A stretch of DNA of 64,000 bases from Piromyces finnis finn (GCA_002104945.1 MCFH01000019.1:124001-188000), one strand, 5' to 3'; counted from the stretch's first letter, positions 16,062 through 56,177 are shown. The notes: generated by a model not told the origin, from the letters alone. Numbers and translations: made by a program.

Positions 16062-18643
16062 TAAATAAAATATTCAAAAACTAATTAATATTACCATTAC
16101 TATTCATTTATTTATTTTATTTATAATGATTTTATTTAATATTTGTTTTTTTTTTTTGTTATATTTTTAGATACATTTTATTCAAATATATTGTATTATT
16201 ATATTACATTTTTCTTTATACAAAAAAATATATATATTTTTATTAGAGCTTTTTATTCAGCTAAAAATAAAAATACATATAGACAAACTTTGAATAGGTG
16301 GATAGAAATAAAATAGTTTCAATTCCTTTTATTTTATTGATAATTAAATAATAAATATATCATTACCAATAAATAAAAATGACTTTAAAGTTATTTAATT
16401 TTTTAGCAGTATTGTTATTGAAATTGACAAATACTTTTAAATATTTTTTTCGATTGCTTCAATCTTTAAACTATATTTTTTCTTTAGTTAATTATTGGTT
16501 GTTATTTCAAATATTTAAATTTTGTTCTTCATTTCTTTCTTCTCTTCTTCTTTTATACTTTAAATACTTTTTATACAATTATTTAAAATCCTTTGAGCAT
16601 TTAGCATTTCAATAGGTAAAAAAAAAAAAAAAAGAATCCAATTTAGGTTTTTTTTTTTCCTTTCTTGGCTAAGGAGGAACATCTAAGAGAATACCATTAT
16701 AGCTTTATTGAATTGAATTTATTCAATAATCAAATTTATTAAATGTTTATTAATTAATATAATAATATTAGAATACAAGAATATTTTTATTATATTAATA
16801 ATGTAGAAAAGTTTTTTTTATTTAACTAGACAGCTTTAATTATTTTAGTTATATAGAAAGAAGAAAAGTATAATAATTAAATATTTGCTGCATCTGTCTA
16901 AATAAGTAATTAAAAAAGAATTTTATATATAAATCATAATAAGAAGCATGAAAAATTGCTGTGCATGTCTAATACTAGACATGTTTTTTGCCTTTTTTTT
17001 AGAAAATTTTGTACTTTTTTCTTTTCATCATAAAAATGATGAAGATAAAAACTGATGTTTAAAAAGTTTTCTTAATTCACTTTTCTTCTTTTTATACTAT
17101 TTTTTTTGTTATATATATGTAATATATAAATATCAAAATATTCATAATAACCCATAGTTTACATAAACTTACAACTTATTATCAAATTAAACTACTTAAT
17201 AAAATTATCATTAGCCACTTTTAATATCTTTTATAATTATTTTTATTATTTTTAATGTTTTTAGTGTTTTATTACTTTTAATATTTATTATTGAGAAAGA
17301 TAATTTATCGTATTCTTTTTATCATTTAATTAATAAACTTTTTAAAATTTAAACAATTCAAATTTAATAATATTTTGTGGTTAATTAACAATTTAACAAT
17401 TAAAAATGTGGTAAAATTAAAAATTTTAAATTTTTATTAATTTATAAAATTTTTCATTAATCATTAAAAAGCGCATCCACAAGTAAAATCCGCAAAAAAT
17501 TTAATATTTTAACATTCACCACATTTTGTAATTCATATTATTTTTATTTTTTGTAAAATATAAACTTTCCTTCTGCCAAACTATTTTTATTATTAATATA
17601 AAAAAAGTATAAAAAGAAGAAAAATGAATTAAAAAATTTTTTTTAAACATCAGTTTTTATCTTCATCATTTTTATGATGAAAAGAAAAAAGTACAAAATT
17701 TTCTAAAAAAAAGGCAAAAAACATGTCTAGTATTAGACATGCACAGCAATTTTTCATGCTTCTTATTATGATTTATATATAAAATTCTTTTTTAATTACT
17801 TATTTAGACAGATGCAGCAAATATTTAATTATTATACTTTTCTTCTTTCTATATAACTAAAATAATTAAAGCTGTCTAGTTAAATAAAAAAAACTTTTCT
17901 ACATTATTAATATAATAAAAATATTCTTGTATTCTAATATTATTATATTAATTAATAAACATTTAATAAATTTGATTATTGAATAAATTCAATTCAATAA
18001 AGCTATAATGGTATTCTCTTAGATGTTCCTCCTTAGCCAAGAAAGGAAAAAAAAAAACCTAAATTGGATTCTTTTTTTTTTTTTTTTACCTATTGAAATG
18101 CTAAATGCTCAAAGGATTTTAAATAATTGTATAAAAAGTATTTAAAGTATAAAAGAAGAAGAGAAGAAAGAAATGAAGAACAAAATTTAAATATTTGAAA
18201 TAACAACCAATAATTAACTAAAGAAAAAATATAGTTTAAAGATTGAAGCAATCGAAAAAAATATTTAAAAGTATTTGTCAATTTCAATAACAATACTGCT
18301 AAAAAATTAAATAACTTTAAAGTCATTTTTATTTATTGGTAATGATATATTTATTATTTAATTATCAATAAAATAAAAGGAATTGAAACTATTTTATTTC
18401 TATCCACCTATTCAAAGTTTGTCTATATGTATTTTTATTTTTAGCTGAATAAAAAGCTCTAATAAAAATATATATATTTTTTTGTATAAAGAAAAATGTA
18501 ATATAATAATACAATATATTTGAATAAAATGTATCTAAAAATATAACAAAAAAAAAAAACAAATATTAAATAAAATCATTATAAATAAAATAAATAAATG
18601 AATAGTAATGGTAATATTAATTAGTTTTTGAATATTTTATTTA
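16062..18643. mobile_element. Foldback element copy A (arms 16062-17098 and 17607-18643, core in + orientation)
   Basis: Perfect inverted arms: mirrored coordinates sum to 34705 at the outer end, at the twin 78-aa ORFs and at 17041/17664. No coding content and no clear TSD. Confidence 0.85.
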
Positions 18644-18881
18644 TTGTGTTGTTTTAGTGTTGCTTGTCAAAATTAACAAAAAAGATTGAATAATTAATTT
18701 TAAATATACTTTTATTTTTTTAACTTTACCACATTTCATTTTTAAAAAATCTTAAACAACCAATAAAAAAGCAACCAAGACTATTAAAAATAAAATTTTT
18801 TTTAAAACTAAAAAGAAATTGAAATTGACAATGTAAAAGGTTTTTTTTTTTTTTAAAAAAAAAAGTAAAGTTCAGGGTAAA

Positions 18882-20989: not shown

Positions 20990-23505
20990 TTAATACTATT
21001 TAATATTATGATACATTTTAAATAATATACACAAAATTAATTATTATTTTCTTATTTATAACTTTTTTTTATTTAGTTTAAAATGGTTTTATTTATTAAT
21101 TTTGATTCAAATACATTGTATTGTTATTTCTTTAGATTATATCATATAAATATTTTTATTAAAGCTTTTTATAAAAATTAAAATAAAAACACATATATAG
21201 ACAAGTTTTGAATTATAGAGTAACAATAACATTTTTAATTATTTTTATTGTATTAATAATAAAACTTTTTCTAATTACTAATAAATGAAAATATAGGTAG
21301 TAAATCATTTTTTATTTATTTTTTGTTATTTCAATCTTTAAATTATTTTTTCTTTAATCTATTATCGATTATTATTTCATAGACTTAATCTTTTTGTATA
21401 TTCCATTTTTCTTATCTTCTTTTTCTTCATTAATATTAAAAATATCTATTTAACAGCTATTTAGAGTAGTATTGCTTCATTATCTTTCTGATAGATTCTC
21501 TAAGTGTTTTGGAATTTAATTTACTTTCATATTTTTTCTTCTTTGGCTAGGTAGTTTGGATAGAACATCTAAGAGAATTCCATAATAACTTTATTGAACT
21601 GATTTATTCAAAATTATTTTATATTTAATAATTAATATAATATATAATAATACTAGAATACTAGAATATTTTTATTATATTAATAATGTAGAAAAGTTTT
21701 TTTTATTTAACTAGACAGCTTTAATTATTTTAGTTATATAGAAAGAAGAAAAGTATAATAATTAAATATTTGCTGCATCTGTCTAAATAAGTAGTTAAAA
21801 AAGTATTTTATATATAAATCATAATAAGTAGCATGAAAAATTGCTGTGCATGTCTAATACTAGACATGTTTTTTGCCTTTTTTTTAGAAAATTTTGTACT
21901 TTTTTCTTTTCATCATAAAAATGATGAAGATAAAAACTGATGTTTAAAAAAATTTTTTTAATTCATTTTTCTTCTTTTTATACTTTTTTTATATTAATAA
22001 TAAAAATAGTTTGGCAGAAGGAAAGTTTATATTTTACAAAAAATAAAAATAATATGAATTACAAAATGTGGTGAATGTTAAAATATTAAATTTTTTGAGG
22101 ATTTTACTTGTGGATGCGCTTTTTAATGATTAATGAAAAATTTTATAAATTAATAAAAATTTAAAATTTTTAATTTTACCACATATTTAATTGTTAAATT
22201 GCTAATTAACCACAAAATATTATTAAATTTGAATTTTTTAAATTTTAAAAAGTTTATTAATGAAATGATAAAAAGAATACAATAAATTATCTTTCTCAAT
22301 AATAAATATTAAAAGTAATAAAACACTAAAAACATTATAAATAATAAAAATAATAAAAATAATTATAAAAGATATTAAAAGTGGCTAATGATAATTTTAT
22401 TAAGTAGTTTAATTTGATTATAAGTTGTAAGTTTATGTAAACTATAGGTTATTATGAATATCTTGATATTTATATTTTATTACATATATATAACAAAAAA
22501 ATAGTATAAAAAGAAGAAAAGTGAATTAAAAATTTTTTAAACATCAGTTTTTATCTTCATCATTTTTATGATGAAAAGAAAAAAATACAAAATTTTCTAA
22601 AAAAAAGGCAAAAAACATGTCTAGTATTAGACATGCACAGCAATTTTTCATGCTACTTATTATGATTTATATATAAAATACTTTTTTAACTACTTATTTA
22701 GACAGATGCAGCAAATATTTAATTATTATACTTTTCTTCTTTCTATATAACTAAAATAATTAAAACTGTCTAGTTAAATAAAAAAAACTTTTCTACTTCT
22801 ACATTATTAATATAATAAAAATATTCTAGTATTCTAGTATTATTATATTAATCTTTAAATATAAAATAATTGTTGAATATATCCAGTTTAATAAAGCTAT
22901 TATGGAATTCTCTTAGATGCTCTGTTCTAACTTGTCAATGAAGAAAAAATGTAAATGTAAATTAAATTCCAAAATACTTATAGAATCTTTCAGAAAGATA
23001 ATGACTCCATACTAGTCTAAATAGTTAATAATAAATTAAAGATTAAATTCTATGAAGACTAAATTAATGAAAAATATTTATAATTATTAAATATTTATTG
23101 ATATTTATTTGTATAATAATACTATAAATAAAATGGTTAAATTTCTATGTATTCATAATATTTTTATTTATTAGTAAATTAGTAAACATTATATTACTAA
23201 TGTAATAAATGAAATTAAAATTCTAATTTATTTTTACTCTATAATACAAAGTTTGTCTATATGTATTTTTATTTTAGTTCATTAAAAAAACTTTAATAAA
23301 ATATATATAATAATTCAGTATAAATAAATATAAATAAATACTTATAACAATACAATGTATTCGAATAACATGTATATAAAAATAAAATAATAAACAATAC
23401 CATTTAAATTAAAAAAAAATAAAAATAAAAAATAGTAATTAATTTTTTCTATTTAATGTGTATAGTATAATAGTATTAAATATAATTAATTTTTAATTTT
23501 TTTTA
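20990..23505. mobile_element. Foldback element copy B (core in - orientation; left outer arm diverged)
   Basis: Same inner-arm motifs and core as copy A, with GTGGATGCGC near 22110. Ends are approximate. Confidence 0.8.
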
Positions 23506-24820: not shown

Positions 24821-27462
24821 AATAATTTACATAGCACATAACAATTATTTATTTATTTTATCTATAAATTTTTATTTAATTATTTTACAATAGTTTTATT
24901 TATTATTTAAATTTTATTTTATTTTTATATACTTATTATTCAAATACATTGTATTTTTATAAGTATTTATTTATATTTATTTATACTAAATATTATATAT
25001 ATTTTTATTAAAGTTTTTTTATTGAACTAAAATAAAAATACATATAGACAAACTTTGAATTATAGAGTAAAAAAAATAAAACTGTAATTTTATTGTTTTA
25101 TCAGTAATTTTTCAAATTTTTGAATATTTAGTTACTAATTAGTAAAAATAATGATTAAAGTGTTTATAATTCTATTATAGTTGTAGGTTAGAGTATTATT
25201 ATACAAATCAATAAATATTTAATAATTATAAATATTTTTCATTAATTTAGTCTTCATAGAATTTAATCTTTAATTTATTATCAATTATTATTTCATAGAT
25301 TTAATCTTTTTGTTTATTCCTTTTTTCTTATCTTCTTTTTCTTCATTAATACTTAAAATATCTATTTAACAGCTATTTAGAGTAGTATTGGTTCATTATC
25401 TTTCTGAAAGATTCTATAAGTATTTTGGAATTTAATTGACATTTACATTTTTTCTTCTTTGGCTAGGCAGTTAGGATAGAACAACGAGAGGAATACCATA
25501 ATAGCTTTATTGAACTGGATTTATTCAACAATTATTTTATATTTAAAAATTAATATAATAATACTAGAATACTAGAATATTTTTATTATATTAATAATGT
25601 AGAAAAGTTTTTTTTATTTAACTAGACAGCTTTAATTATTTAGTTATATAGAAAGAAGAAAAGTATAATAATTAAATATTTGCTGCATCTGTCTAAATAA
25701 GTAATTAAAAAAGAATTTTATATATAAATCATAATAAGTAGCATGAAAAATTGCTGTGCATGTCTAATACTAGACATGTTTTTTGCTTTTTTTTTAGAAA
25801 ATTTTGTACTTTTTTCTTTTCATCATAAAAATGATGAAGATAAAAACTGATGTTTAAAAAAATTTTTAATTCACTTTTCTTCTTTTTATACTATTTTTTT
25901 TGTTATATATATGTAATATATAAATATCAAGATATTCATAATAACCTATAATTTAAATAAACTTACAGCTTATTATCAAATTGAACTACTTAATAAAATT
26001 ATCATTAGCCACTTTTTAATATCTTTTATAATTATTTTTATTGTTTTTATTATTTATAATGTTTTTAGTGTTTTATTACTTTTAATATTTATTATTGAGA
26101 AAGATAATTCATCGTATTCTTTTTATCATTTCATTAATAAACTTTTTAAAATTTAAAAAACCAAATTTAATAATATTTTGTGGTTAATTAACAATTTTAC
26201 AAATTAAAAATGTGGTAAAATTAAAAATTTTAAATTTTTATTAATTTATAAAATTTTTCATTAATCATTAAAAAGCGCATCCACAAGTAAAATCCTCAAA
26301 AAATTTAATATTTTAACATTCACCACATTTTGTAATTCATATTATTTTTATTTTTTGTAAAATATAAACTTTCCTTCTGCCAAACTATTTTTATTATTAA
26401 TATAAAAAAAGTATAAAAAGAAGAAAAATGAATTAAAAAATTTTTTTTAAACATCAGTTTTTATCTTCATCATTTTTATGATGAAAAGAAAAAAATACAA
26501 AATTTTCTAAAAAAAAAAAGCAAAAAACATGTCTAGTATTAGACATGCACAGCAATTTTTCATGCTGCTTATTATGATTTATATATAAAATACTTTTTTA
26601 ACTACTTATTTAGACAGATGCAGCAAATATTTAATTATTATACTTTTCTTCTTTCTATATAACTAAATAATTAAAGCTGTCTAGTTAAATAAAAAAACTT
26701 TTCTACTTCTACATTATTAATATAATAAAAATATTCTAGTATTCTAGTATTATTATATATTATATTAATTATTAAATATAAAATAATTGTTGAATAAATC
26801 CAATTCAATAAAATTATTATGGTATTCTCATAGATGTTCTATCCTAGATACCTAGCCAAAGAAGAAAAAATATAAATGTAAATTAAATTTCAAAATACTT
26901 ATAGAATCTTTCAGAAAGATAATGAACCAATACTACTCTAAATAGCTGAAAATAGATATTTTAAGTATTAATGAAGAAAAAGAAGATAAGAAAAAAGGAA
27001 TAAACAAAAAGATTAAATCTATGAAATAATAATTGATAATAAATTAAAGATTAAATTTTCTATGAAGACTAAATTAATGAAAAATATTTATAATTATTAA
27101 ATATTTATTAATTTGTATAATAATGCTATGTATTCATAATATTTTTTATTTATTAGTAAAGTAGTAAACGTTATATTACTAATAAAATTGAAAGAATAGA
27201 ATTTAGCTAGAACTTAAATTACTAATAAAAATTTATATTACTAATATTAAACTTTAATTAATAATAAAATTATAATGTAATTACTAATGTAATGTTTCTT
27301 AGAATAATCGTAACATATAGTATTACTAATTTACATTAGCCACATACTTTAGTATAAAAAGGAATTTGTAAATGTATTATTAAAATCTTTGTAATTACCT
27401 TTATTAAATTAAATTTAATAAACATAATAAATAAACTTTATTAAACCTAAATTTACTTTTCA

Positions 27463-27476
27463 GATTAAGAGTCTCA
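27463..27476 (+). promoter_or_regulatory. Primer-binding site complementary to the anticodon arm of tRNA-Lys(CUU)
   Basis: GATTAAGAGTCTCA lies directly after the 5' LTR. Its reverse complement TGAGACTCTTAATC contains GACTCTTAATC, the recalled anticodon stem-loop core of eukaryotic tRNA-Lys(CUU). Confidence 0.7.
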
Positions 27477-32255: not shown

Positions 32256-32288
<33 letters not shown>

Positions 32289-43618: not shown

Positions 43619-45337
43619 ATGAATAGTAGCAAAGAAAGGAATACCGAGTTATTCTATAAAGAATTAGAGAAAAAAGACTGTGATCCTGATTATTTATTGG
43701 AACTATCTCAAAAAGGAATTTTTTTAATAAAGCCATTATTCGAATATGAATCAATAAAATATCATGAAAACGTTGTAGATATAAGTTTAATAAGTCAACT
43801 ATTTTTTATTATTTTTAACGATAATCAATATGAGAGATTTATGCAAATTTCTTTTACTGATAAATACAAAAAATATGTAATATTGGGTATTTATCATATG
43901 TATACCTATGATTTCTTAATAATTAACGAATTTTTTATTAATAAATTACTGAAAGAATCAAGAAGAGACATATTAGTAAAATTTATAAAAAATATCAATA
44001 TAGTATTCTACATTTATTTTTTGTATAAATATAATATCATTACAGATATTAAAATACCTTTATCTATCAGAAATGGAACACATAGATATAAATTATATCC
44101 AAGTATTTTATTTGTACTATTCGAAGATTACTTTTATTTGAATGGAAAACATAAAATAAAAAATGTTACTAAATATATTTCCGAAGAAAAATTAATTAAT
44201 AATATATTTGTAGTATTTGGAAGAGATACTAATGTTTTAGATTATTTAATACAAAATTTTAACTGTATAAATAATATTAACTGCGATTGTTACTATAGAA
44301 TGCATTTAAATTTTTCTATGAAAATAATTTCAAAATATTCCAAAAAAATATTTAAACCTAATTTATTAAAATTTAAATGTGAAAATAAAGTAATTGAAAA
44401 TTATGTAAATGATTTATATTCTGATCGTTCGTTACATAATGTTAAAAATTGTAAGTTATATTTAGAGTTTTATGATTATTTTGATAATATTGATATTAAA
44501 AAAACACCAATTAATTATACTGTTGAAAATTTTGATAAATTTAAAAATGATATTTCGGTTGGTAGTTATAAATATAACGAAAATATCAATTTTAATAATA
44601 AAGATATATTTATATTTGAAAATAAAAAGGAAACGAAAATTCAAGAAATAATAAATTTAAATGACTATGTTATTAAAGAAGAATCTGATTTTGATGACTT
44701 TTATTATGACAGTGAAGATTCTTGTTATTATATCAATATTAAAAATGAAAATGAAAAAGAGGAAAATAATGAACCTGATAATAGACTTGTGAAAATTAAT
44801 GAAATATTAACTTATGAATATGATGGACTTAGTGAGTTTTACGAAAATTTTTATGAATCCATGTCTTGTTTATTATTTTATTATTTAATTATTTGTGATA
44901 ATGATAGGGTAGAAAAAATATTAAAAGATCCTAACTATATATTACATTTGAAAGTTGAAGAATTAATAGAAGATCCAAATCATTATTATAATTCAGAGTT
45001 TGATAAAACTTCACAATATAATTTTGAAATAATGAAAAAAATTTGTTATATAGCTTCCTTAGTATATAATAATGCACCGGACTTTGTAATACATTTACTA
45101 TGTTATGAATTAAATTCAACATTCGTAGAATATAAAGATAATAAAATCAATATTGTTTATTTTTGTAATCATGAATTTATATCATCACGTTTTTTATCTG
45201 ATAATTTTCATATTTACGCTCTTATACAAATAATTATAAATAGAACTTCAAATGAAAATTTTAATAATCTTTTTGTTACATTTAAAAATGATCTCCTTTT
45301 TCATAAAAGAGCTGATGATTATGTAAAGATATTTTAG
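43619..45337 (+). CDS. Intronless 572-aa protein of unknown function (Tyr/Ile/Asn/Phe-rich, virus-like composition)
   Basis: Long open frame in very AT-rich DNA; no motif recognised. Confidence 0.75.
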   Translation: MNSSKERNTELFYKELEKKDCDPDYLLELSQKGIFLIKPLFEYESIKYHENVVDISLISQLFFIIFNDNQYERFMQISFTDKYKKYVILGIYHMYTYDFLIINEFFINKLLKESRRDILVKFIKNINIVFYIYFLYKYNIITDIKIPLSIRNGTHRYKLYPSILFVLFEDYFYLNGKHKIKNVTKYISEEKLINNIFVVFGRDTNVLDYLIQNFNCINNINCDCYYRMHLNFSMKIISKYSKKIFKPNLLKFKCENKVIENYVNDLYSDRSLHNVKNCKLYLEFYDYFDNIDIKKTPINYTVENFDKFKNDISVGSYKYNENINFNNKDIFIFENKKETKIQEIINLNDYVIKEESDFDDFYYDSEDSCYYINIKNENEKEENNEPDNRLVKINEILTYEYDGLSEFYENFYESMSCLLFYYLIICDNDRVEKILKDPNYILHLKVEELIEDPNHYYNSEFDKTSQYNFEIMKKICYIASLVYNNAPDFVIHLLCYELNSTFVEYKDNKINIVYFCNHEFISSRFLSDNFHIYALIQIIINRTSNENFNNLFVTFKNDLLFHKRADDYVKIF

Positions 45338-45455
45338 AAACTTGCTCTATTTATTATATATTACGAAAAATATAATTTCTTAACTAGTTTAATAAAAAAA
45401 GGTAAATTATATAGACTTTTATACTTGTTTATAATATAAACCATAATTAATTCAT

Positions 45456-46088
45456 TTAAATAAAATATGAAATAATTTTACATCCTTTACCACAATAAGC
45501 ATCAGTTGTACCACAGTAACCGTATTTACTACAACATTTGTTATTTTTACATTTGTAAATACCATCAGATAGACTTCCACATTTATCATTAGATAATATG
45601 GTTGGAGTTGAAGGGTTTTTTTGGGTTGTAACATCTTTAGCATAAAATGTTTTAGTGCCAACAATATAAGTTTTCTCAGGAACAGTAAAAGTGTTAGAAT
45701 AAGTAACTACTTTATTAGTATTAGAATTGATAGAAGTGCTCTTTTTAGTTTTAGCTAATGTAGTAGTTTTAACTGTATTTGATTTTGATTTTGTGGTGGT
45801 TTCGGAATTAGCATTGAAAGCATTATTACTATTTATTTCATTTTTTAATTTATCAAAAACTTCGGAATTATTCATCTCATCTTGCAATTTGTCGAATACA
45901 TCAGAGTTGTCCATTTCATTTTTTAATTTGTCGAATACATCAGAGTTGTCCATTTCATTTTGTAATTTATCAAAAATATTAGAATTGTCCATTTCATACT
46001 TTAATTTATCAAAAATATCAGAATCAAATGAACCATTTGAAGTTACCATAGTTATTAGTAATAATGAAAGTATGCTAATAAGTAACAT
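45456..46088 (-). CDS. Secreted protein with five 13-aa helical repeats, a Thr/Ser/Lys linker and a C-terminal chitin-binding (CBM18/hevein) domain
   Basis: Signal peptide; 39-bp repeats (NSDVFDKLKNEMD-type); CGSLSDGIYKCKNNKCCSKYGYCGTTDAYCGKGC. The last hevein Cys pair appears missing. Confidence 0.85.
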   Translation of the reverse strand: MLLISILSLLLITMVTSNGSFDSDIFDKLKYEMDNSNIFDKLQNEMDNSDVFDKLKNEMDNSDVFDKLQDEMNNSEVFDKLKNEINSNNAFNANSETTTKSKSNTVKTTTLAKTKKSTSINSNTNKVVTYSNTFTVPEKTYIVGTKTFYAKDVTTQKNPSTPTILSNDKCGSLSDGIYKCKNNKCCSKYGYCGTTDAYCGKGCKIISYFI

Positions 46089-46279
46089 TTTTTATTATCG
46101 AATTCTAGTTAATTCTATTTATTTCTGTTTTTATTTAATTATTAATATTTAATTAATATTTTATTAAATTTATTACTTTTAATTTTTTTTTTTAAAAAAA
46201 ATATCAAAAATAATCAATTTAAATATGTATTACTTTAATAATAATGAATATATGTACAGATATTAATTTATTTATCTAT

Positions 46280-46888
46280 TCACCACGTAATAGTAAATCC
46301 TAACTCACAAGCCAGTTCACGAGCTTTACAAAAACAATTTGATTTTTTAAATTCATTATATTCATAAATAGGATGTGGAACCTCCACAACCGATGATTTA
46401 GTTTCGTTGATGGACTTAAACAACATTAAAACAAGAGGATGGTCATTCGAAATATATTGTACTAAATTGTTAATGAAAGATTCCCACAATAAATAATAAT
46501 GATAGGGTAATGGATCAGCAATAGTTCGAGTAAAGCAAAAGTTGCACAAAAATATTCCATTATTTAACCATCTATCTAAATGATGATTTAATGGTCGCTG
46601 AAAAGAAGTTACTGTATTTTCTAAATTCGTATAAATACGCTCCAATAATAATGGTGGTTTATTATTAGAAATTTTCGTTCCGAAAGCGATGTCACTAATA
46701 TCGCGTGTATTTTTATAAGGCATATCTCCTACCATCACAACTTTGATATCCTGTAATTGGACATATTTAAAAATTCCAAATACATCTTCCAATGGTGGAG
46801 TACAATATGAATTTCTCAATTGATTGTATATATGTAATACTAATTTAGAATTTTTTATAAAGAAATCGTCCCAAGACATGTGTACCAC
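46280..46888 (-). CDS. ung: Divergent family-1 uracil-DNA glycosylase, virus-like
   Basis: PPLEDVFGIF, IKVVMVGDMPY (cf. VKVVILGQDPY), LDRWLNNGIFLCN (cf. LERWARQGVLLLN) and VPHP. Intronless. Confidence 0.85.
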   Translation of the reverse strand: MVHMSWDDFFIKNSKLVLHIYNQLRNSYCTPPLEDVFGIFKYVQLQDIKVVMVGDMPYKNTRDISDIAFGTKISNNKPPLLLERIYTNLENTVTSFQRPLNHHLDRWLNNGIFLCNFCFTRTIADPLPYHYYLLWESFINNLVQYISNDHPLVLMLFKSINETKSSVVEVPHPIYEYNEFKKSNCFCKARELACELGFTITW

Positions 46889-47543
46889 TACTACTTTTAT
46901 TTCTACTTTTTACTTTTTTATTTTCTTTTTAATAAGTATAATTATTTAGTAAATTCTATTAATAGAAATAGTATTCTTTTAATTGTTTATAAATTTTATA
47001 TGAAAAAAAAATTAAGTATATAAAAATATTATTTAAATAAAATTTTTCCAAAATTAAAATCCTTTGACTATTTCAATACCAACTATTAATTTTAATCATT
47101 TGATAGTTAAAAAGGAATTTCATTATATATCCTTGATTTATGCTTATTATCCTAAAATTGGAAAATTTATTATCTGAAGAAATATTTATATTGAAATGAT
47201 TTAAAAATTATTCAATATAATATATATATATATATGTACTAAATAAAAAAATATTATATAAAAATGTTTAAAAAAGTAATAAAACAATAAAATATATCAA
47301 GTTTTAAAATATATATAAATTTAATATTTCAAAATTTATTTACGAATAAAGATTTTCAAATTTATATATATTAATTATTAATAATTTTTATTAATTTTTT
47401 TTATTAGTTTGCTTTAGTATTTATAATATTTATATATTACATTTATTAATTATTTATTATTAATTATTTATTATTAATTATTTATTATATTATATTTATT
47501 ATTATTACTTTTTATTACTTATTATTATTATTATTACTTATTA

Positions 47544-48871
47544 TTATTTATTATTTGTTAATGACATAGCAAAAGCATATTCCAAAAATGAATCATTTAT
47601 ATCAGGAATATTTGTGGAAAAAGGATAATAATAAATTTCATCATCATTATAATCATAAACTACACCTGTTTTGTCTGTAATAAGATCTTCCATACTTTTG
47701 GCAGGTTCTCTTTGCAAATAGCCTGTAGAAGAGGTATTAAGAGAAGTTGAAATAATCCCAACACGATCTGATTTGGAATGCACAAATAGCTCTTTTGCAA
47801 TAAGTCCTATAAAATAAGAACTCTTAATGTAACATTTTGGCAAAACAGCTTGAACTCCTACTGACATTAAAATTTGAATTATGTTATCGATTTTACCTTT
47901 CGAACCACTATTAACAATATTGGTTAAATGATTGTTTATAGATTCAGATAATTTTTCTAATAATTTATAATCACTGTAACGACGATTTTTTAATCTATTG
48001 TTGCTGATAGATTTACTTTGATTTAGAATGGAAGAGTCCAAATTTGATAATGATAGTGTCGGTAAAAATAAATCTGGAATATTTTCCAAAATACATTTAA
48101 ATTTATTTTCAATGCTAGGGGTATGCAATCCGAAATAGAAATACTTATGATATGAAATAAATTATATTCATGAGCCGTACGTTGAACATCCCGCATAAAT
48201 TTTAAATAAAAATCATTACCGTAATGAGTAATGGAATTCAATAAAATCTTTTGATTTTCACCACTAATAGTGTGGAGTAGAATGCCACGGTCAACCAAAA
48301 TCTCATTTCCATTTTTTAATGTTAATGTTTTTGGAAGCAACAATGAAAGTAAATGTTTATACGGTATTTTATTGGTCTTCATTCGAGACTTGTAAAATTT
48401 ACAAAATATATTCCATTCCTTTTTTGATATTTTTAATTTTTCACATATGTTTTCGATAATATGAGGTTCAACAATGTGTTGATCGTTTGTCATATTGTAT
48501 AAGCCAGTCAAGGTATCTTGAATAAAACTAATCATGAGTGATCCATCCTTGAAAGAACGGATATTATTTGAAATGTTTAATTTAGTAGCTAATTCCTTTT
48601 TGGACTCTTTTCCCGGTAGCCAAAAAATATTCATTTCATCCCCATCAAAATCAGCTTGAAAAACATTGGCTATTAGAGGATTAATTTGGATGATTTGACT
48701 GCTGCTGGGAAAGGAACGAACTGATAAAATGGAAGTAATTTGAAGTGTAGGCTGTCTATTAATAATTACATAGTCATTTGGTTTATATCCATATGGAATT
48801 AATTGATCTGTAAATACCTTTGGTATCAAAATTTTATCTAGTGGTACATTTATATTTGGTACAATGAATAT
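47544..48871 (-). pseudogene. Divergent multisubunit RNA polymerase largest subunit (Rpb1/beta-prime-like), partial, with a -1 frameshift near 48120
   Basis: VIINRQPTL, QADFDGDEMN (catalytic DxDxD) and QDTLTG in ORF 48023..48829; GSKG, SSYFIGL and TSSTGYLQR..KSMEDL in ORF 47544..48128. The frames join at a C4 run (ATA CCCC TAGC). The frame is open upstream to 48871. Confidence 0.9.
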
Positions 48872-49524
48872 TTAAACAAGTGAATATTTAAATAAAAATG
48901 GTATCTTTCATGAAAATAAAATTGATACTTTTATATATAAGAAATTTAAATTGAACCAATATAGACAGGCATCATCAAGTGATATTTATAAATCTTTAAA
49001 TTTAAATAGCGATGATGAAGTAATTAACGAACTATCATTTAAACAATTTAGAACCCTATAAAAGTAAGAAAGATAAAATAGATACTTGTGTAATTGTTAA
49101 GAGCTTATTAAAGGATGTTGATAATATAAAAATGAACAAGAAGATTTGAAAAATAAACCTAAATGGGCAATTAAAAGATCTGAGAATAAAAGAGAAACGT
49201 TTTTAATTGAAAAATGGGTTTTCGAAAATAATCTAAACTTTTACATAGTATGCATCCTTCAAAGAGGAAACACAATATTTAAAATTTTAAACATTAAGTT
49301 GGGGAAAGAAGGCAATTAATTAATAATTATATCTTTCAACCTTCTTTTTAACACTTTTTCTCTTGTACTCTAATTTTTTTAAGTTTTTGGAATTTTTGTT
49401 AATGTTATATCTATTGTGATTTAGATCCTTTTCATATTGATCGATTTTTAAAAGTATCTTTTGTACAAATTTTATATAATAAAAATAAATATATAAATTT
49501 TCTTTTTTAATTAGATTTAAAAAA

Positions 49525-52205
49525 AAAAATAAAAATTAATTGTATTTTAATACCATTATACTATACACATTAAATAAAAAAATTAATTACTACTTTTTAT
49601 TTTTATTTTTTTTAATTTAAATGGTATTGTTTATTATTTTATTTTTATATACATATTATTCGAATACATTGTATTGTTATAAGTATTTATTTATACTAAA
49701 TATTATATATATTTTATTAAAGTTATTTTATTGAACTAAAATAAAAATACATATAGACAAACTTTGAATTATAGAGTAAAAATAAATTAGAATTTTAATT
49801 TCATTTATTATATTAGTAATATAACGTTTACTACTTTACTAATAAATAAAAAATATTATTAATACATAGCATTATTATACAAGTTAATAAATATTTAATA
49901 ATTATAAATATTTTTCAGTAATTTAGTCTTCATAGAATTTAATCTTTAATTTATTATCAATTATTATTTCATAGATTTAATCTTTTTGTTTATTCCATTT
50001 TTCTTATCTTCTTTTTCTTCATTAATACTTAAAATATCTATTTTCAGCTATTTAGAGTAGTATTGGTTCATTATCTTTCTGAAAGATTCTATAAGTATTT
50101 TGAAATTTAATTTACATTTATATTTTTTCTTCTTTGGCTAGGTATCTAGGATAGAACATCTATGAGAATACCATAATAATTTTATTGAATTGGATTTATT
50201 CAAAATTATTTTATATTTAATAATTAATATAATATATAATAATACTAGAATACTAGAATATTTTTATTATATTAATAATGTAGAAGTAGAAAAGTTTTTT
50301 TATTTAACTAGACAGCTTTAATTATTTAGTTATATAGAAAGAAGAAAAGTATAATAATTAAATATTTGCTGCATCTGTCTAAATAAGTAGTTAAAAAAGT
50401 ATTTTATATATAAATCATAATAAGTAGCATGAAAAATTGCTGTGCATGTCTAATACTAGACATGTTTTTTGCTTTTTTTTTTAGAAAATTTTGTATTTTT
50501 TTCTTTTCATCATAAAAATGATGAAGATAAAAACTGATGTTTAAAAAAAATTTTTTAATTCATTTTTCTTCTTTTTATACTTTTTTTATATTAATAATAA
50601 AAATAGTTTGGCAGAAGGAAAGTTTATATTTTACAAAAAATAAAAATAATATGAATTACAAAATGTGGTGAATGTTAAAATATTAAATTTTTTGCGGATT
50701 TTACTTGTGGATGCGCTTTTTAATGATTAATGAAAAATTTTATATATTAATAAAAATTTAAAATTTTTAATTTTACCACATTTTTAATTTGTAAAATTGT
50801 TAATTAACCACAAAATATTATTAAATTTGGTTTTTTAAATTTTAAAAAGTTTATTAATGAAATGATAAAAAGAATACGATGAATTATCTTTCTCAATAAT
50901 AAATATTAAAAGTAATAAAACACTAAAAACATTATAAATAATAAAAACAATAAAAATAATTATAAAAGATATTAAAAAGTGGCTAATGATAATTTTATTA
51001 AGTAGTTTAATTTGATAATAAGCTGTAAGTTTATGTAAACTATGGGTTATTATGAATATCTTGATATTTATATATTACATATATATAACAAAAAAATAGT
51101 ATAAAAAGGAGAAAAGTGAATTAAGAAAACTTTTTAAACATCAGTTTTTATCTTCATCATTTTTATGATGAAAAGAAAAAAGTACAAAATTTTCTAAAAA
51201 AAAAAAGCAAAAAACATGTCTAGTATTAGACATGCACAGCAATTTTTCATGCTGCTTATTATGATTTATATATAAAATACTTTTTTAATTACTTATTTAG
51301 ACAGATGCAGCAAATATTTAATTATTATACTTTTCTTCTTTCTATATAACTAAAATAATTAAAGCTGTCTAGTTAAATAAAAAAAACTTTTCTACTTCTA
51401 CATTATTAATATAATAAAAATATTCTAGTATTCTAGTATTATTATATATTATATTAATTATTAAATATAAAATAATTGTTGAATAAATCCAGTTCAATAA
51501 AGCTACTATGATATTCTCTTAGATGTTCTATCCTAACTGCCTTGCCAAAGAAGAAAAAATGTAAATGCCAATTAAATTTCAAAATACTTATAGAATCTTT
51601 CAGAAAGATAATGACCCCATACTACTCTAAATAGTTGAAAATAGATATTTTAAGTATTAATGAAGAAAAAGAAGATAAGAAAAAAGGAATAAACAAAAAG
51701 ATTAAATCTATGAAATAATAATTGATAATAAATTAAAGATTAAATTCTATGAAGACTAAATTAATGAAAAATATTTATAATTATTAAATATTTATTGATA
51801 TTTATTTGTATAATAATACTATAAATAAAATGGTTAAATTTCTATGTATTCATAATATTTTTATTTATTAGTAAATTAGTAAACATTATATTACTAATGT
51901 AATAAATGAAATTAAAATTCTAATTTATTTTTACTCTATAATACAAAGTTTGTCTATATGTATTTTTATTTTAGTTCATTAAAAAAACTTTAATAAAATA
52001 TATATAATAATTCAGTATAAATAAATATAAATAAATACTTATAACAATACAATGTATTCGAATAACATGTATATAAAAATAAAATAATAAACAATACCAT
52101 TTAAATTAAAAAAAAATAAAAATAAAAAATAGTAATTAATTTTTTCTATTTAATGTGTATAGTATAATAGTATTAAATATAATTAATTTTTTAATTTTTT
52201 TTATA
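49525..52205. mobile_element. Foldback element copy E (core -)
   Basis: 49525-49700 is the inverse of 52020-52205; same core and motifs as the other copies. Confidence 0.85.
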
Positions 52206-53090
52206 AAGCTCAATATTTTGATGATAATAAATTTATTGAAACTAAAGATTTTATTAAATTATGTTATGAGTACCCAGAGTTTGCCTATGGTTTCTACTGG
52301 TTATTGAAAACAAGAAGCGGATACAAGTTAGATGCTAGAATTGCAAAAGCTGCTTAATTTGTTGATCCAGTTTGTCCTAACTACTGTCCATGTTGCAAGA
52401 GTAGAGATCAAAGTATTAAGCATTGATTATTAGATTGTCCAACATTTAAAGATATCCGTATTAAACATTGTAATTCTATAGTCCAGTTATTAAATTTTTT
52501 CAGTCAACGTAATTCCAACACTCCTATCAATAATAATAAAATTGTTTATATAAATAGAGATAGCAATAATAATAATAATAATAATATTAGTAATGATAGC
52601 AATAGTGAAGATAATAATTATAATTTAGATTGTAATATAGTCAATAATAGTGATAATATTAATAATCAGGTGAATATTAATGTATATGATTATTCTAGTG
52701 GGTGTATTAAAATGTTTAAATTCCTTCTTGGGAGAAGAAGTTTAAAAAATATCAATTATAAAACAAGGGAATAGAGAAAACTTTGCAAGTGTCAGATTCA
52801 ATTGGGCACTTACGAAGGAACACCATTCTTGATGGTAACAGCGGAACTTCTAACGAAAATCATGCCTTTTGTTATTGGCCAGCAATGGTCAATGTTCAAA
52901 AGGTTTGAAGCAACATCCAAAAGCGTTAATGCTGAAGAAACAGTAAGACAGGCCAGGAGGGCTAGTGCAACTAATGGAGATCATAATTTTGTCCTATGAT
53001 AAAATTTTGATCTTTGCCTCGGTGTCCCATTGGAAGTCAAATACAATTATTATACTTTAGTATAATAGTGGCTTTCTTATTTTAATTAAT
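52206..53090 (+). mobile_element. Decayed LINE ORF2 3' fragment, copy 2
   Basis: Same CCHC region and same stops as 23506-24350; includes track ORF 52802..52999. Confidence 0.75.
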
Positions 53091-53631
53091 AAAATTACTA
53101 GAATACATTATACCCAATTTTTATTCATTTGTATTTATTTAAATATATTTATTTTTATTTTTATTTTTATTTTTTATAACATGTATTTTTATTTTAATTT
53201 AGTTAATAATAAAGTGTAAAAATATTTAATATATTAAAACTAATAAAGTAATTGTTATAAATGAAAATTAATCTCTAATTATTATGTTTATTAATATTCA
53301 ATAAATGATTAATAATGTCCATGATTAACGAAATATATTAAAAGATTTATTTAAGTATTAAATATTATTCTTTTTATATATATTTAAATAGTAAAGATTA
53401 ATAGGTTTTTATTTAAAAAGAAATGGTTATGTATGACTATTTAAAAATTACATATTTTAATATTATTTATTTATTTATTTATTTGAATAATTAAACAATA
53501 AACAATAAACAATACAAAATACAAAATACACAATGCACAATGCACAATGCACAATGCACACTAAATAATTTACATAGCACATAACAATTATTTATTTATT
53601 TTATCTATAAATTTTTATTTAATTATTTTAC

Positions 53632-56139
53632 AATAGTTTTATTTATTATTTAAATTTTATTTTATTTTTATATACTTATTATTCAAATACATTGTATTTT
53701 TATAAGTATTTATTTATATTTATTTATACTAAATATTATATATATTTTTATTAAAGTTTTTTTATTGAACTAAAATAAAAATACATATAGACAAACTTTG
53801 AATTATAGAGTAAAAAAAATAAAACTGTAATTTTATTGTTTTATCAGTAATTTTTCAAATTTTTGAATATTTAGTTACTAATTAGTAAAAATAATGATTA
53901 AAGTGTTTATAATTCTATTATAGTTGTAGGTTAGAGTATTATTATACAAATCAATAAATATTTAATAATTATAAATATTTTTCATTAATTTAGTCTTCAT
54001 AGAATTTAATCTTTAATTTATTATCAATTATTATTTCATAGATTTAATCTTTTTGTTCATTCCTTTTTTCTTATCTTCTTTTTCTTCATTAATACTTAAA
54101 ATATCTATTTTCAGCTATTTAGAGTAGTATTGCTTCATTATCTTTCTGAAAGATTCTATAAGTATTTTGAAATTTAATTTACATTTATATTTTTTCTTCT
54201 TTGGCTAGGTAGTTTGGATAGAACATCTAAGAGAATTCCATAATAACTTTATTGAACTGATTTATTCAACAATTATTTTATATTTAATAATTAATATAAT
54301 ATATAATAATACTAGAATACTAGAATATTTTTATTATATTAATAATGTAGAAGTAGAAAAGTTTTTTTTATTTAACTAGACAGCTTTAATTATTTAGTTA
54401 TATAGAAAGAAGAAAAGTATAATAATTAAATATTTGCTGCATCTGTCTAAATAAGTAATTAAAAAAGAATTTTATATATAAATCATAATAAGTAGCATGA
54501 AAAATTGCTGTGCATGTCTAATACTAGACATGTTTTTTGCTTTTTTTTTAGAAAATTTTGTACTTTTTTCTTTTCATCATAAAAATGATGAAGATAAAAA
54601 CTGATGTTTAAAAAAATTTTTAATTCACTTTTCTTCTTTTTATACTATTTTTTTGTTATATATATGTAATATATAAATATCAAGATATTCATAATAACCT
54701 ATAATTTAAATAAACTTACAGCTTATTATCAAATTAAACTACTTAATAAAATTATCATTAGCCACTTTTAATATCTTTTATAATTAATTTTATTATTTTT
54801 ATTATTTTTAATGTTTTTAGTGTTTTATTACTTTTAATATTTATTATTGAGAAAGATAATTCATCGTATTCTTTTTATCATTTCATTAATAAACTTTTTA
54901 AAATTTAAAAAACCAAATTTAATAATATTTTGTGGTTAATTAACAATTTTACAAATTAAAAATGTGGTAAAACTAAAAATTTTAAATTTTTATTAATTTA
55001 TAAAATTTTTCATTAATCATTAAAAAGCGCATCCACAAGTAAAATCCTCAAAAAATTTAATATTTTAACATTCACCACATTTTGTAATTCATATTATTTT
55101 TATTTTTTGTAAAATATAAACTTTCCTTCTGCCAAACTATTTTTATTATTAATATAAAAAAAGTATAAAAAGAAGAAAAATGAATTAAAAAATTTTTTTT
55201 AAACATCAGTTTTTATCTTCATCATTTTTATGATGAAAAGAAAAAAATACAAAATTTTCTAAAAAAAAAAAGCAAAAAACATGTCTAGTATTAGACATGC
55301 ACAGCAATTTTTCATGCTGCTTATTATGATTTATATATAAAATACTTTTTTAACTACTTATTTAGACAGATGCAGCAAATATTTAATTATTATACTTTTC
55401 TTCTTTCTATATAACTAAATAATTAAAGCTGTCTAGTTAAATAAAAAAACTTTTCTACTTCTACATTATTAATATAATAAAAATATTCTAGTATTCTAGT
55501 ATTATTATATATTATATTAATTATTAAATATAAAATAATTGTTGAATAAATCAGTTCAATAAAGTTATTATGGTATTCTCATAGATGTTCTATCCTAGAT
55601 ACCTAGCCAAAGAAGAAAAAATATAAATGTAAATTAAATTTCAAAATACTTATAGAATCTTTCAGAAAGATAATGAACCAATACTACTCTAAATAGCTGA
55701 AAATAGATATTTTAAGTATTAATGAAGAAAAAGAAGATAAGAAAAAAGGAATAAACAAAAAGATTAAATCTATGAAATAATAATTGATAATAAATTAAAG
55801 ATTAAATTTTCTATGAAGACTAAATTAATGAAAAATATTTATAATTATTAAATATTTATTAATTTGTATAATAATGCTATGTATTCATAATATTTTTTAT
55901 TTATTAGTAAAGTAGTAAACGTTATATTACTAATAAAATAAATGAAATTAAAATTCTAATTTATTTTTATTCCATAATTCAAAGTTTGTCTATATGTATT
56001 TTTATTTTAGTTCAATAAAATAACTTTAATAAAAATATATATAATAATTCAGTATAAATAAATATTTATAAAAATATAATGTATTTAAATAATAAGTATA
56101 TGAAAATAAAATAAAATTTAAATAATAAATAAAACTATT
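53632..56139. mobile_element. Foldback element copy F (core +), uninterrupted twin of copy C
   Basis: Same termini as copy C; 2508 bp. Confidence 0.87.
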
Positions 56140-56145
56140 TTAAAC

Positions 56146-56177
<32 letters not shown>

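What the first reader, a model, noticed from the sequence alone, without database searches (positions are those of the whole stretch)
16062..56139. Six copies of a 2.5 kb non-coding foldback element within 40 kb
Seen in the sequence: copies A 16062-18643, B ~20990-23505, C 24889-32249, D ~36975-39467, E ~49525-52205 and F 53632-56139 share ~1 kb inverted arms around a ~0.5 kb core whose orientation is +,-,+,-,-,+. The inner ~350 bp of the arms is strongly conserved, the outer arms fall into several variants, and there is no ORF and no convincing TSD. They cover about 15 kb of the window and sit against truncated genes (LRR at 20 kb, LINE relics, the 39.5 kb ORF). Inference: a non-autonomous foldback-type transposon family. 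Alternatives are an origin/enhancer-like repeat (analogous to baculovirus hr regions) associated with the viral block, a centromere-associated repeat, or an invertible cassette.
Basis: partly seen in the sequence, partly recalled or inferred. Interest (0 to 1): 0.8.

Follow-up and report, generated by a model that had tools for sequence, protein, structure and literature searches.

The report
Foldback-like repeat family in gut fungus
Six copies of a 2.6 kb non-coding DNA repeat, each two 1 kb mirror-image arms around a 0.5 kb core, sit within 40 kb of the genome of the horse-gut fungus Piromyces finnis; they look like an unclassified foldback-type mobile repeat that keeps swapping sequence between its copies, not like a viral or centromeric device.

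Summary
The window is Piromyces finnis contig MCFH01000019.1. It holds six 2.5-2.7 kb units, each with about 1.0 kb inverted arms around a roughly 495 bp asymmetric core. Core orientation is +,-,+,-,-,+.

- **No coding signal:** the units have no ORF, no Pfam or Rfam hit and no tandem sub-repeats.
- **Independent placements:** there are four to five, not six. E-end/spacer/F is a recent ~5 kb duplicate of B-end/spacer/C, and its left breakpoint lies inside an arm.
- **Copy C:** split by an intact Ty1/copia element with a 5 bp target duplication. F is the empty site.
- **Conservation runs the unusual way:** the central 1.2 kb is ~98% identical in all copies. Arms beyond ~350 bp are mosaics of at least six classes (median ~63% identity) in recombinant combinations. 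Copy A's arms are identical over ~1 kb.
- **Ends:** no target duplication or shared terminus was found.
- **Seventh locus (61.95-62.47 kb):** a degenerate relic that keeps only three short inner-arm motifs.
- **Viral link:** intact relatives of the neighbouring virus-like block lack these repeats, so an hr-like origin is rejected.

Best reading (confidence 0.5): an unclassified non-autonomous foldback-type repeat whose copies recombine and convert each other. No genome-wide census was possible.

The parts
16062..18643 (+). Copy A: left arm 16062-17104, core 17105-17599, right arm 17600-18643. The arms differ at only 6 positions, all within 45 bp of the core. The outer ~1000 bp are identical. 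The outer arm belongs to a class seen only in A.
20990..23505 (-). Copy B: left arm 20990-21996, core 21997-22490 (minus orientation), right arm 22491-~23505. The arms are 78% alike. From about 23020 outward the right arm is identical to that of E, because the duplication starts there.
24869..27185 (+). Copy C, left piece: left arm 24869-25898, core 25899-26403, first 782 bp of the right arm 26404-27185. The piece ends at the copia insertion. The two pieces of C were compared apart and were not joined.
32046..32276 (+). Copy C, right piece: the outer end of the right arm, beyond the copia insertion.
36960..39466 (-). Copy D: left arm ~36960-37941 (its ACAC landmark is at 36912), core 37942-38446 (minus orientation), right arm 38447-39466. 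The arms are 80% alike. The right end abuts the truncated virus-like ORF exactly.
49513..52210 (-). Copy E: left arm 49513-50593, core 50594-51085 (minus orientation), right arm 51086-52210. The arms are 91% alike.
53612..56165 (+). Copy F: left arm 53612-54658, core 54659-55149, right arm 55150-56165. The arms are 90% alike. F is the recent duplicate of C and is the empty site for the copia insertion.
16826..16983 (+). Motif module of the inner arm, as it stands in copy A. The three motifs are CTAGACAGC (16826), GCATCTGTCTA (16890), and the palindrome CATGTCTAATACTAGACATG followed by a T run (16964). The module is mirrored at 17722-17879 and is present in 11-12 of the 12 arms.
61949..62470 (-). 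Seventh, degenerate locus: two tandem motif modules. All three motifs are kept and the spacers between them are unalignable. There is no recognisable outer arm and no opposite arm.
51717..56627 (.). Recent segmental duplicate of 23020-27185 plus 32046-~32741. Most 150-column windows carry 0-2 substitutions. The left breakpoint lies inside the B/E right arm, about 650 bp from the core.
27186..32045 (+). Neighbour nested in copy C: a full-length Ty1/copia LTR retrotransposon. LTRs are 27186-27462 and 31769-32045, with 1 mismatch in 277. The ORF 27477-31754 is open (1425 aa: gag, integrase, RVT_2). The target duplication is 5 bp, AAAAT.
39467..48829 (-). Neighbour between D and E: a decayed virus-like gene block.
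- Remnant of a 1753-aa ORFan, 39467-40987.
- 572-aa ORFan, 43619-45337 (+).
- Chitin-binding protein, 45456-46088.
- Uracil-DNA glycosylase, 46280-46888.
- Remnant of an RNA polymerase largest subunit, 47544-48829.

Best explanation
The six units belong to one non-coding long-inverted-repeat (foldback-type) repeat family of Piromyces finnis. Each unit has two arms of about 1.0-1.08 kb in inverted orientation around an asymmetric ~495 bp core.

**Shown:**
- The unit is discrete. It lies in unrelated flanking DNA in four to five independent placements.
- One further pair of copies arose by a recent ~5 kb segmental duplication that starts inside an arm.
- The central ~1.2 kb is about 98% identical in every copy.
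- Arms further out are mosaics of at least six old sequence classes. These are combined differently in different copies.
- Variable sites in the centre give mutually incompatible groupings of copies.

**Inferred:**
- The unit spread as a non-autonomous DNA element.
- It was served in trans by a protein that recognises the three GTCTA/TAGAC-containing motifs in each inner arm. These are the only parts still conserved in the degenerate seventh locus.
- After insertion the copies exchange sequence by ectopic recombination and gene conversion, starting in the shared centre.
- That exchange would account for five observations:
  - it homogenises the centre;
  - it shuffles arm classes;
  - it made A's two arms identical;
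  - it produced the B-C/E-F duplication;
  - it removed neighbouring DNA, leaving the virus-like genes cut off at the edges of D and E.
- Core orientation is then simply the orientation of each copy.
For: - **Structure and significance:**
- **Non-coding:**
- **Unrelated flanks:** apart from the one duplication, the spacers share nothing.
- **Arm ends:** the scan found an ACAC-type landmark 970-1085 bp from the core in seven of the 12 arms; F_L is the recent duplicate of C_L, and C_R and F_R show a similar end in the alignment.
- **Centre versus arms:**
  - Pairwise divergence in the centre is 0.4-2.7%, with incompatible site patterns such as {C,E,F} against {B,C,F}.
  - Arms 350-1050 bp from the core have a median identity of 62-65% between copies.
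- **Recombinant arm combinations:** relative to the core, the left-arm classes are d (B, D, E), f (C, F) and a (A). The right-arm classes are b (B), u (D), g (C, E, F) and a (A).
- **Duplication:** its breakpoint lies inside an arm.
- **Possible conversion tract:** a 15-site patch is private to C_L inside an otherwise ~99.5% identical duplicate.
- **Copy A:** its arms are identical over ~1 kb.
- **Seventh locus:** motif islands are conserved there and nothing else is.
- **Truncated neighbour:** homology to the Neocallimastix 1753-aa protein stops exactly at D's edge. The rest of that gene is nowhere in the window.
- **Comparable behaviour in a known family:** foldback-like Galileo elements show sequence exchange between copies, chimeric copies and ectopic recombination (PMC3573991, PMC2775673).
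Against: - No target-site duplication and no shared terminal sequence could be defined.
- The outermost ~100 bp differ between copies.
- The centre is more conserved than the ends. This is the reverse of what cut-and-paste elements usually show.
- No longer copy with a transposase or recombinase, and no transposase-like ORF, lies in the window.
- No copy was seen outside this stretch:
  - none in 22 kb of another P. finnis contig;
  - no exact core or motif 20-21-mers in the metagenome or viral contig collections, apart from one chance bacterial hit.
- Dispersal has therefore not been shown.
- The uniform 98% identity of the centre could also reflect a function rather than conversion.
Confidence: 0.5

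Rival explanations
1. This is a locally amplified palindromic low-copy repeat, not a mobile element. One ancestral inverted duplication was copied a few times within this region by unequal recombination or break-induced replication. It then diverged and was partly re-homogenised.
For: - All copies seen lie within 46 kb.
- One copy pair demonstrably arose by segmental duplication.
- There is no target duplication and the ends are fuzzy.
- No copy lies in the other P. finnis locus sampled.
Against: - Apart from the one duplication, the flanks and spacers of the copies are unrelated.
- The arms nevertheless end in the same ~110 bp zone, with a shared landmark. Segmental copying would carry variable amounts of flank.
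- Arm classes differ by 35-50%. That implies a long history, which is hard to confine to 40 kb.
Confidence: 0.2
2. This is a functional chromosomal cis-element, for example a centromere-associated inverted repeat, a replication origin or a boundary element. Its conserved centre is bound by a host protein at the three motifs per arm.
For: - The centre is ~98% conserved while the arms drift.
- Only the motif islands are conserved in the seventh locus.
- The architecture resembles small inverted-repeat centromeres of budding yeasts, which have 0.5-4.3 kb repeats around a mid region, in some species homogenised between chromosomes (PMC12711049).
- The surroundings are gene-poor and rich in relics, and hold a nested retrotransposon.
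Against: - Six units within 40 kb is not the one-per-chromosome pattern of inverted-repeat centromeres.
- The conservation of the centre is uniform across AT-rich spacers, not motif-specific. That fits homogenisation better than selection.
- The exact core or motif words are absent from gut metagenomes that do contain other anaerobic fungi.
Confidence: 0.1
3. This is a hairpin-RNA (small-RNA) locus. Transcription through a unit gives a ~1 kb double-stranded stem that feeds RNA interference.
For: - The geometry is right: a 1 kb stem and a 0.5 kb loop.
- Anaerobic gut fungi respond to RNAi (title and abstract of PMC5796279, listed).
Against: - The arms show no homology to any gene or element in the window, or to the virus-like relatives, that could be a target.
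- In B and D the arms are only 78-80% alike.
- No expression data were available.
Confidence: 0.07
4. This is an hr-like origin or enhancer repeat, or a terminal repeat, belonging to the virus-like block that lies between D and E.
For: - D and E bracket the virus-like block.
- The block's outermost genes are cut exactly at, or close to, the repeat edges.
Against: - Intact syntenic relatives of the block carry none of the motifs and no inverted repeat of 150 bp or more. The relatives checked were N. californiae (21 kb), eight metagenome contigs, A. robustus and Neocallimastix sp. 'constans'.
- Four of the six copies are not next to viral genes.
- The viral genes are truncated mid-gene at the junctions, which is not a natural genome end.
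Confidence: 0.03
5. This is an invertible cassette. The core flips between the arms by recombination, which would explain the mixed orientations.
For: - Both core orientations occur.
- Some exchange between arms next to the core is visible.
Against: - With near-symmetric arms, core orientation is just copy orientation.
- Arm class d is always on the same side of the core (B/E and D), and so is class g (C/F and E).
- No recombinase gene is nearby.
Confidence: 0.03
6. The structure is an assembly artefact of a long-read assembly.
For: Copy A's arms are perfectly identical over ~1 kb.
Against: - The six copies all differ from one another.
- They have unique flanks on both sides.
- One carries a nested retrotransposon with a clean target duplication, and its duplicate shows the empty site.
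Confidence: 0.01

Closest known systems
Galileo (foldback-like member of the P superfamily, Drosophila)
   Same: - Inverted arms up to ~1.2 kb make up most of the non-autonomous copies.
- Copies exchange sequence, form chimeric elements and cause rearrangements by ectopic recombination (PMC3573991, PMC2775673).
   Different: - Galileo has internally repetitive arms, a 7 bp target duplication (my recollection) and a P-type transposase in its longest copies.
- None of these was found here.
- Here the centre is the conserved part, not the ends.
Drosophila Foldback (FB) elements and other foldback families (e.g. Tetris, PMC4079207; Tm1 Mutator/Foldback of root-knot nematodes, PMC3169594)
   Same: - Long inverted arms and little or no coding capacity.
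- Association with rearrangements.
- Pairs of elements can bracket foreign DNA, as D and E bracket the virus-like block.
   Different: - FB arms are built of tandem sub-repeats and give 9 bp target duplications (textbook knowledge, not tested against a reference here).
- The arms here are unique sequence without tandem structure, and no duplication is detectable.
Inverted-repeat centromeres of budding yeasts (Candida tropicalis, Komagataella phaffii, Pichia kudriavzevii, Barnettozyma spp.)
   Same: - A unique mid region flanked by an inverted pair 0.5-4.3 kb long and often 99-100% identical.
- In some species the repeats are homogenised between chromosomes (PMC12711049).
   Different: - Those occur once per chromosome, in long gene-free intervals.
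- Here six units lie within 40 kb, and most arm pairs are only 78-91% alike.
- Kinetochore occupancy is unknown.
Baculovirus homologous regions (hrs)
   Same: Repeated, palindrome-containing non-coding units scattered among viral genes.
   Different: - hrs are arrays of short imperfect palindromes (about 30 bp, from my own knowledge) and are part of every genome copy.
- These units are 2.6 kb single palindromes and are absent from intact relatives of the neighbouring virus-like block.

Membership tests
Foldback (FB)-type transposons | Long inverted arms make up most of the element, with a short middle region | tested here: met
   Arms of 1.0-1.08 kb surround a ~495 bp core in all six copies.
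Foldback (FB)-type transposons | Arms are built of tandem sub-repeats | tested here: not met
   Tandem Repeats Finder reports only short, low-scoring AT-rich arrays inside the arms.
Foldback (FB)-type transposons | Target-site duplication flanks the element | tested here: not met
   - No direct repeat common to the copies was found.
- The only candidates are palindromic words inside the inverted repeat itself.
- AT-richness and decayed ends limit the power of this test.
Galileo / P superfamily | The longest copies encode a P-type (THAP-domain) transposase | tested here: not met
   - No copy carries an ORF.
- No Pfam hit was found in the stop-free segments tested (the ten longest distinct ones, 51-80 codons) or in neighbouring ORFs.
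- Only this window could be examined.
Galileo / P superfamily | Copies exchange sequence, giving chimeric arms | tested here: met
   The arm classes are mosaic, occur in recombinant combinations, and site patterns in the centre are incompatible.
Non-autonomous TIR transposon (MITE-like, long-TIR) | Discrete unit with the same ends in unrelated flanking DNA | tested here: inconclusive
   - The flanks are unrelated.
- The arms end in one ~110 bp zone, with an ACAC-type landmark detected in seven of the 12 arms.
- The outermost ~100 bp differ between copies, so no exact terminus can be defined.
Non-autonomous TIR transposon (MITE-like, long-TIR) | The termini are the best-conserved part, because the transposase binds there | tested here: not met
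   The centre is ~98% identical. The terminal ~170 bp are less conserved than that, and the mid-arm is about 60%.
Non-autonomous TIR transposon (MITE-like, long-TIR) | Dispersed copies and insertion polymorphism | not testable with these tools
   - No DNA-searchable copy of the fungal genome is on hand.
- One other 22 kb P. finnis locus has no copy.
Viral hr-type repeats | Present in the genomes of related viruses or virus-like elements | tested here: not met
   Thirteen related loci from three other anaerobic fungi and from metagenomes lack the motifs. The five that were scanned for inverted repeats (L002, L003, L006, L021, L022) have none of 150 bp or more.
Inverted-repeat centromere | One inverted-repeat unit per chromosome | tested here: not met
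   Six units lie within 40 kb of one contig.
Inverted-repeat centromere | Kinetochore-protein occupancy or Hi-C centromere clustering at the locus | not testable with these tools
   No such data can be reached. No paper on centromeres of this phylum was found.
Described repeat libraries (Repbase/Dfam) | Sequence match to a curated family | not testable with these tools
Literature searches gave nothing for this phylum.

The most novel reading that the evidence does not exclude
The 1.2 kb centre is not just the homogenised middle of a selfish repeat. It is a functional module recognised by a dedicated sequence-specific protein at its three motifs per arm. Two forms are possible:
- a centromere- or origin-type chromosomal element of an early-diverging fungal phylum whose centromeres are unknown;
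- the target of a homing-like, break-and-copy process that spreads the centre from palindrome to palindrome.
Probability: 0.12. Interest if true: 0.7.

Novelty: new variant of a known kind. Interest (0 to 1): 0.35.

Why it matters
- Repeats of anaerobic gut fungi (Neocallimastigomycota) are almost uncharacterised.
- This family gives a compact, well-resolved example of concerted evolution inside palindromic repeats. The centre is kept uniform, the arms are shuffled, one copy has freshly identical arms, and a segmental duplication starts inside an arm.
- It also shows how such repeats erode neighbouring DNA. Here that neighbour is an endogenous virus-like block.
- If a genome-wide census showed one cluster per chromosome, the family would become the first candidate centromere sequence for the phylum.
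- Otherwise it is an ordinary, if unclassified, foldback-type repeat.

Tried and rejected
1. **Search for relatives elsewhere.** Exact core and motif 20-21-mers were searched in IMG/VR and in the metagenome contigs. There was nothing except one chance hit in a bacterial-looking contig, L014.
2. **Sampling more of the P. finnis genome through proteins.**
   - The copia polyprotein has no annotated P. finnis paralogues.
   - No gene models lie inside the repeats.
   - One other P. finnis locus has no copy.
3. **Orthologous empty site.** I looked through the CotH gene. The Anaeromyces robustus ortholog sits in a different, non-syntenic neighbourhood.
4. **Weak BLASTN matches of arm ends.** Matches to N. 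californiae and to CotH 3' flanks turned out to be AT-rich low complexity.
5. **Core as a structured or known RNA.** The single-strand fold has z = 0.23, and there is no Rfam hit even at E = 1.
6. **Nested origin.** I considered a younger element inserted into the centre of an older palindrome. I rejected it because inverted symmetry runs unbroken across the boundary between the conserved and variable parts, and no centre-less copy exists in the window.
7. **A retracted inference of my own.** I first read the duplicated spacer's 4.4% divergence against 0.5% in the centre as constraint. The sliding-window count showed the duplication is uniformly recent, with a few divergent patches, so I withdrew that argument.
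8. **The 572-aa virus-like ORFan.** It gives a confident helical model (pLDDT 78, pTM 0.84) but has no structural neighbour in the PDB or BFVD.

- The copia insertion was not cut out of copy C.
- No Repbase or Dfam comparison was possible.

Full report
**Source.** The CotH ORF at 59013-60617 is encoded exactly on NCBI contig MCFH01000019.1 of assembly GCA_002104945.1. MCFH is Piromyces finnis Pirfi3, an anaerobic gut fungus from a horse (PMC6712302; taxonomy). The window corresponds to about 124001-188000 of that 857 kb contig. It is 18.7% G+C. It is not human, and nothing in it is a virus of animals, people or crops.

**The observation.** Self-comparison confirms six units.

| Copy | Coordinates | Arm-to-arm identity |
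|---|---|---|
| A | 16062-18643 | 99.4% |
| B | 20990-~23505 | 78% |
| C | 24869-27185 plus 32046-~32276 | 94% over the inner 725 bp |
| D | ~36960-39466 | 80% |
| E | 49513-52210 | 91% |
| F | 53612-56165 | 90% |

- A 21-nt word from the core occurs once per copy, in orientation +,-,+,-,-,+. None is expected by chance.
- The units hold no ORF of 60 codons or more, apart from a mirrored junk ORF in A's arms.
- No stop-free segment of 45 codons or more has a credible Pfam hit.
- There is no tRNA or Rfam match.
- There are no tandem sub-repeats.
- The core does not fold better than shuffled sequence.

**Anatomy.** Aligning the copies in core orientation shows a near-invariant centre of about 1.22 kb. 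It comprises the inner ~350 bp of each arm plus the core.
- Pairwise substitution in the centre is 0.4-2.7%.
- Further out the arms become mosaics. Between copies, median identity is 65% at 350-700 bp from the core and 62% at 700-1050 bp.
- At least six sequence classes can be told apart.
- Relative to the core, class d lies on one side in B, D and E. Class g lies on the other side in C, E and F. Classes f, b and u fill the remaining places. Copies are therefore recombinant combinations of arm classes.
- Copy A has its own class on both sides. Its arms differ at six positions, all within 45 bp of the core, and are identical over the outer ~1 kb.
- Parsimony-informative sites in the centre support incompatible groupings, for example {C,E,F}, {B,C,F} and {C,D,E,F}. 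That means exchange between copies.
- Each inner arm carries three short motifs that share a GTCTA/TAGAC half-site. In copy A they start at 16826, 16890 and 16964. The third is an 8+8 palindrome followed by a T run.
- The core carries three TGTGGT-type words. A near-perfect copy of one 20-mer lies 75 bp outside A.

**Ends.** The scan found an ACAC-type landmark 970-1085 bp from the core in seven of the 12 arms; F_L duplicates C_L, and C_R and F_R show a similar end in the alignment. D's right arm stops at 1020 bp against a coding sequence. The unit is therefore discrete to within about 100 bp.
- The outermost stretch differs between copies.
- The inverted symmetry stops at a different point in each copy.
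- A systematic scan found no direct repeat other than palindromic words inside the arms.
- 'No convincing target duplication' therefore stands, with the caveat that 83% A+T leaves little power.

**History that can be read directly.**
1. 23020-27185 plus 32046-~32741 and 51717-~56627 are a recent duplicate pair. Most 150-column windows have 0-2 substitutions. The left breakpoint lies inside the B/E right arm, about 650 bp from the core, as expected for homology-driven copying between two units.
2. After that duplication, an intact Ty1/copia element entered C (27186-32045; LTRs with 1 mismatch in 277; 1425-aa ORF). It made a 5 bp duplication. F shows the empty site.
3. Inside the duplicate pair, a ~190 bp patch of C's left arm carries 15 private differences, while F agrees with the other arms. 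This is either a conversion tract from a copy not in the window or local hypermutation.
4. Apart from this duplication, the spacers and flanks of the copies are unrelated. That leaves four to five independent placements.

My first reading of 'spacer 4.4% against centre 0.5%' as evidence of constraint was wrong. The 4.4% comes from a few divergent patches.

**A seventh locus.** Single-copy nhmmer and BLASTN find only one other relative in the window, at 61949-62470 on the minus strand. It consists of two tandem modules. The three inner-arm motifs are almost intact, while the spacers between them are unalignable and of different length. No outer arm or opposite arm is recognisable. Motif islands in diverged background are what protein-binding sites look like. 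The protein could be an element-specific enzyme or a host factor.

**The neighbourhood.**

Between D and E lies a decayed virus-like block.
- The 572-aa ORFan (43619-45337) has relatives only in anaerobic fungi and gut metagenomes.
- In Neocallimastix californiae (L002) and in metagenome contigs (L003-L013), the relatives sit in a conserved set of genes:
  - ORFans of 1245, 1753, 1257 and 1848 aa without Pfam domains;
  - chitin-binding proteins;
  - a 936-aa protein with a ligase/capping-type nucleotidyltransferase domain and a methyltransferase domain;
  - a uracil-DNA glycosylase;
  - an Rpb2-like RNA polymerase subunit.

In the window the genes stand as follows.

| Gene | State |
|---|---|
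| Uracil-DNA glycosylase | Open; 64% identical to the N. californiae protein |
| Chitin-binding gene | Open |
| 572-aa ORF | Open, but homologous only over its first half |
| Rpb1-like gene | Truncated at both ends and split once by a frameshift |
| 1753-aa homologue | Truncated at both ends and interrupted once |

- Homology to the 1753-aa protein ends exactly at D's right edge. The missing two-thirds of the gene is nowhere in the window. D therefore marks a deletion or rearrangement junction, not a simple insertion.

None of the related loci contains the motifs, and none of the five scanned for inverted repeats has one of 150 bp or more. This includes integrated copies in Anaeromyces robustus and Neocallimastix sp. 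'constans'. That rejects the hr-like or terminal-repeat idea.

**Interpretation.** The discrete unit in unrelated flanks, the absence of coding capacity and the exchange between copies fit a non-autonomous foldback-type repeat. In behaviour it is closest to Galileo, whose copies exchange arm sequence, form chimeras and cause rearrangements by ectopic recombination (PMC3573991, PMC2775673).
- It fails the defining tests of the described families. It has no target duplication, no tandem sub-repeats and no transposase. The centre, not the ends, is most conserved.
- I therefore describe what it works like and do not file it in a family.
- The reversed gradient is most simply explained by conversion nucleated in the shared centre and limited by arm divergence. 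A break at the centre of a long palindrome, repaired from another copy, would give exactly this. That mechanism is inference.
- A functional centre, whether a centromere-like inverted repeat (compare PMC12711049), an origin or a boundary, is not excluded. It is the most interesting reading left.

**Limits.**
- No tool here searches fungal genomes by DNA. Copy number and distribution outside the window are therefore unknown, and this is the main uncertainty.
- No repeat library (Repbase, Dfam) was available.
- I compared the two pieces of copy C apart and proposed no test of mobility.

- the heptamer terminus associated with recombination signals and one transposon superfamily;
- a giant-virus promoter word;
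- a glycosylase active-site motif;
- part of an Atg8 sequence.

I also wrote short degenerate descriptions of arm-end landmarks in my reasoning. No consensus of the element was built, saved or used.

**Verdict.** This is a real, unclassified foldback-type repeat family with unusually clear signs of concerted evolution and of repeat-mediated rearrangement. It is of moderate interest (0.35) unless a genome-wide census shows a chromosome-scale pattern.

Noticed in passing
window 39467-48829; loci L002-L013, L021, L022: A decayed block of virus-like genes: an RNA polymerase large-subunit remnant, a uracil-DNA glycosylase, a chitin-binding protein and ORFans.
- Intact syntenic relatives occur in N. 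californiae and in many herbivore-gut metagenome contigs. They also carry an Rpb2-like subunit, a capping-enzyme-like 936-aa protein, and ORFans of 1250-1850 aa without any Pfam domain.
- The 487/572-aa ORFan family has only ~70 representatives among 1.8 billion proteins. The named ones are all from anaerobic gut fungi.
- It gives a confident all-helical model with no PDB or BFVD neighbour.
- This may be an undescribed endogenous virus-like element of Neocallimastigomycota.
   Followed up: partly
window 27186-32045: A full-length, apparently intact Ty1/copia LTR retrotransposon. Its ORF is 1425 aa, its LTRs are 277 bp with one mismatch, and its target duplication is 5 bp. It is nested in copy C, and copy F preserves the empty site. 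The closest relatives in the protein collection are only 62% identical.
   Followed up: yes
window 23797-24201 versus ~52540-52950: Inside an otherwise ~99.5% identical recent duplication, a ~400 bp patch carries 48 substitutions. It covers a 109-aa ORF (23927-24256; 84% amino-acid identity to its twin at 52685-52996; no Pfam hit). The cause could be conversion from a third copy elsewhere, or rapid divergence.
   Followed up: partly
window 34631-34861 and 43178-43415: A separate ~240 bp repeat, 81% identical and in inverted orientation. One copy lies in the C-D spacer and the other just upstream of the 572-aa virus-like ORF. Its type is unknown.
   Followed up: no
window 24766-24817 and 53509-53560: A seven-unit heptamer microsatellite lies directly outside the left arm of C and of F. 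It abuts the ACAC-type landmark at the arm end and looks like an expansion of the terminal sequence.
   Followed up: no
window 18717-18736: A 19/20 match to a 20-nt core word lies 75 bp outside copy A and about 150 bp upstream of the LRR-like ORF that starts at 18882. It could be a trace of an older copy or a shared regulatory word.
   Followed up: no
window 56994-57107 versus 60486-60605; locus L021 8910-9929: A fragment of the acidic-repeat 3' end of the CotH gene lies just right of copy F. In A. robustus a short CotH gene sits directly next to a member of the virus-like ORFan family. The P. finnis CotH ortholog in A. robustus is in a different, ordinary gene neighbourhood.
   Followed up: partly
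window 33255-33905 and 41801-42130: Two ORFs encode small secreted cysteine-rich proteins with a C-terminal membrane span and a basic tail. They are weakly similar to each other. One lies in the C-D spacer and one inside the virus-like block.
   Followed up: no
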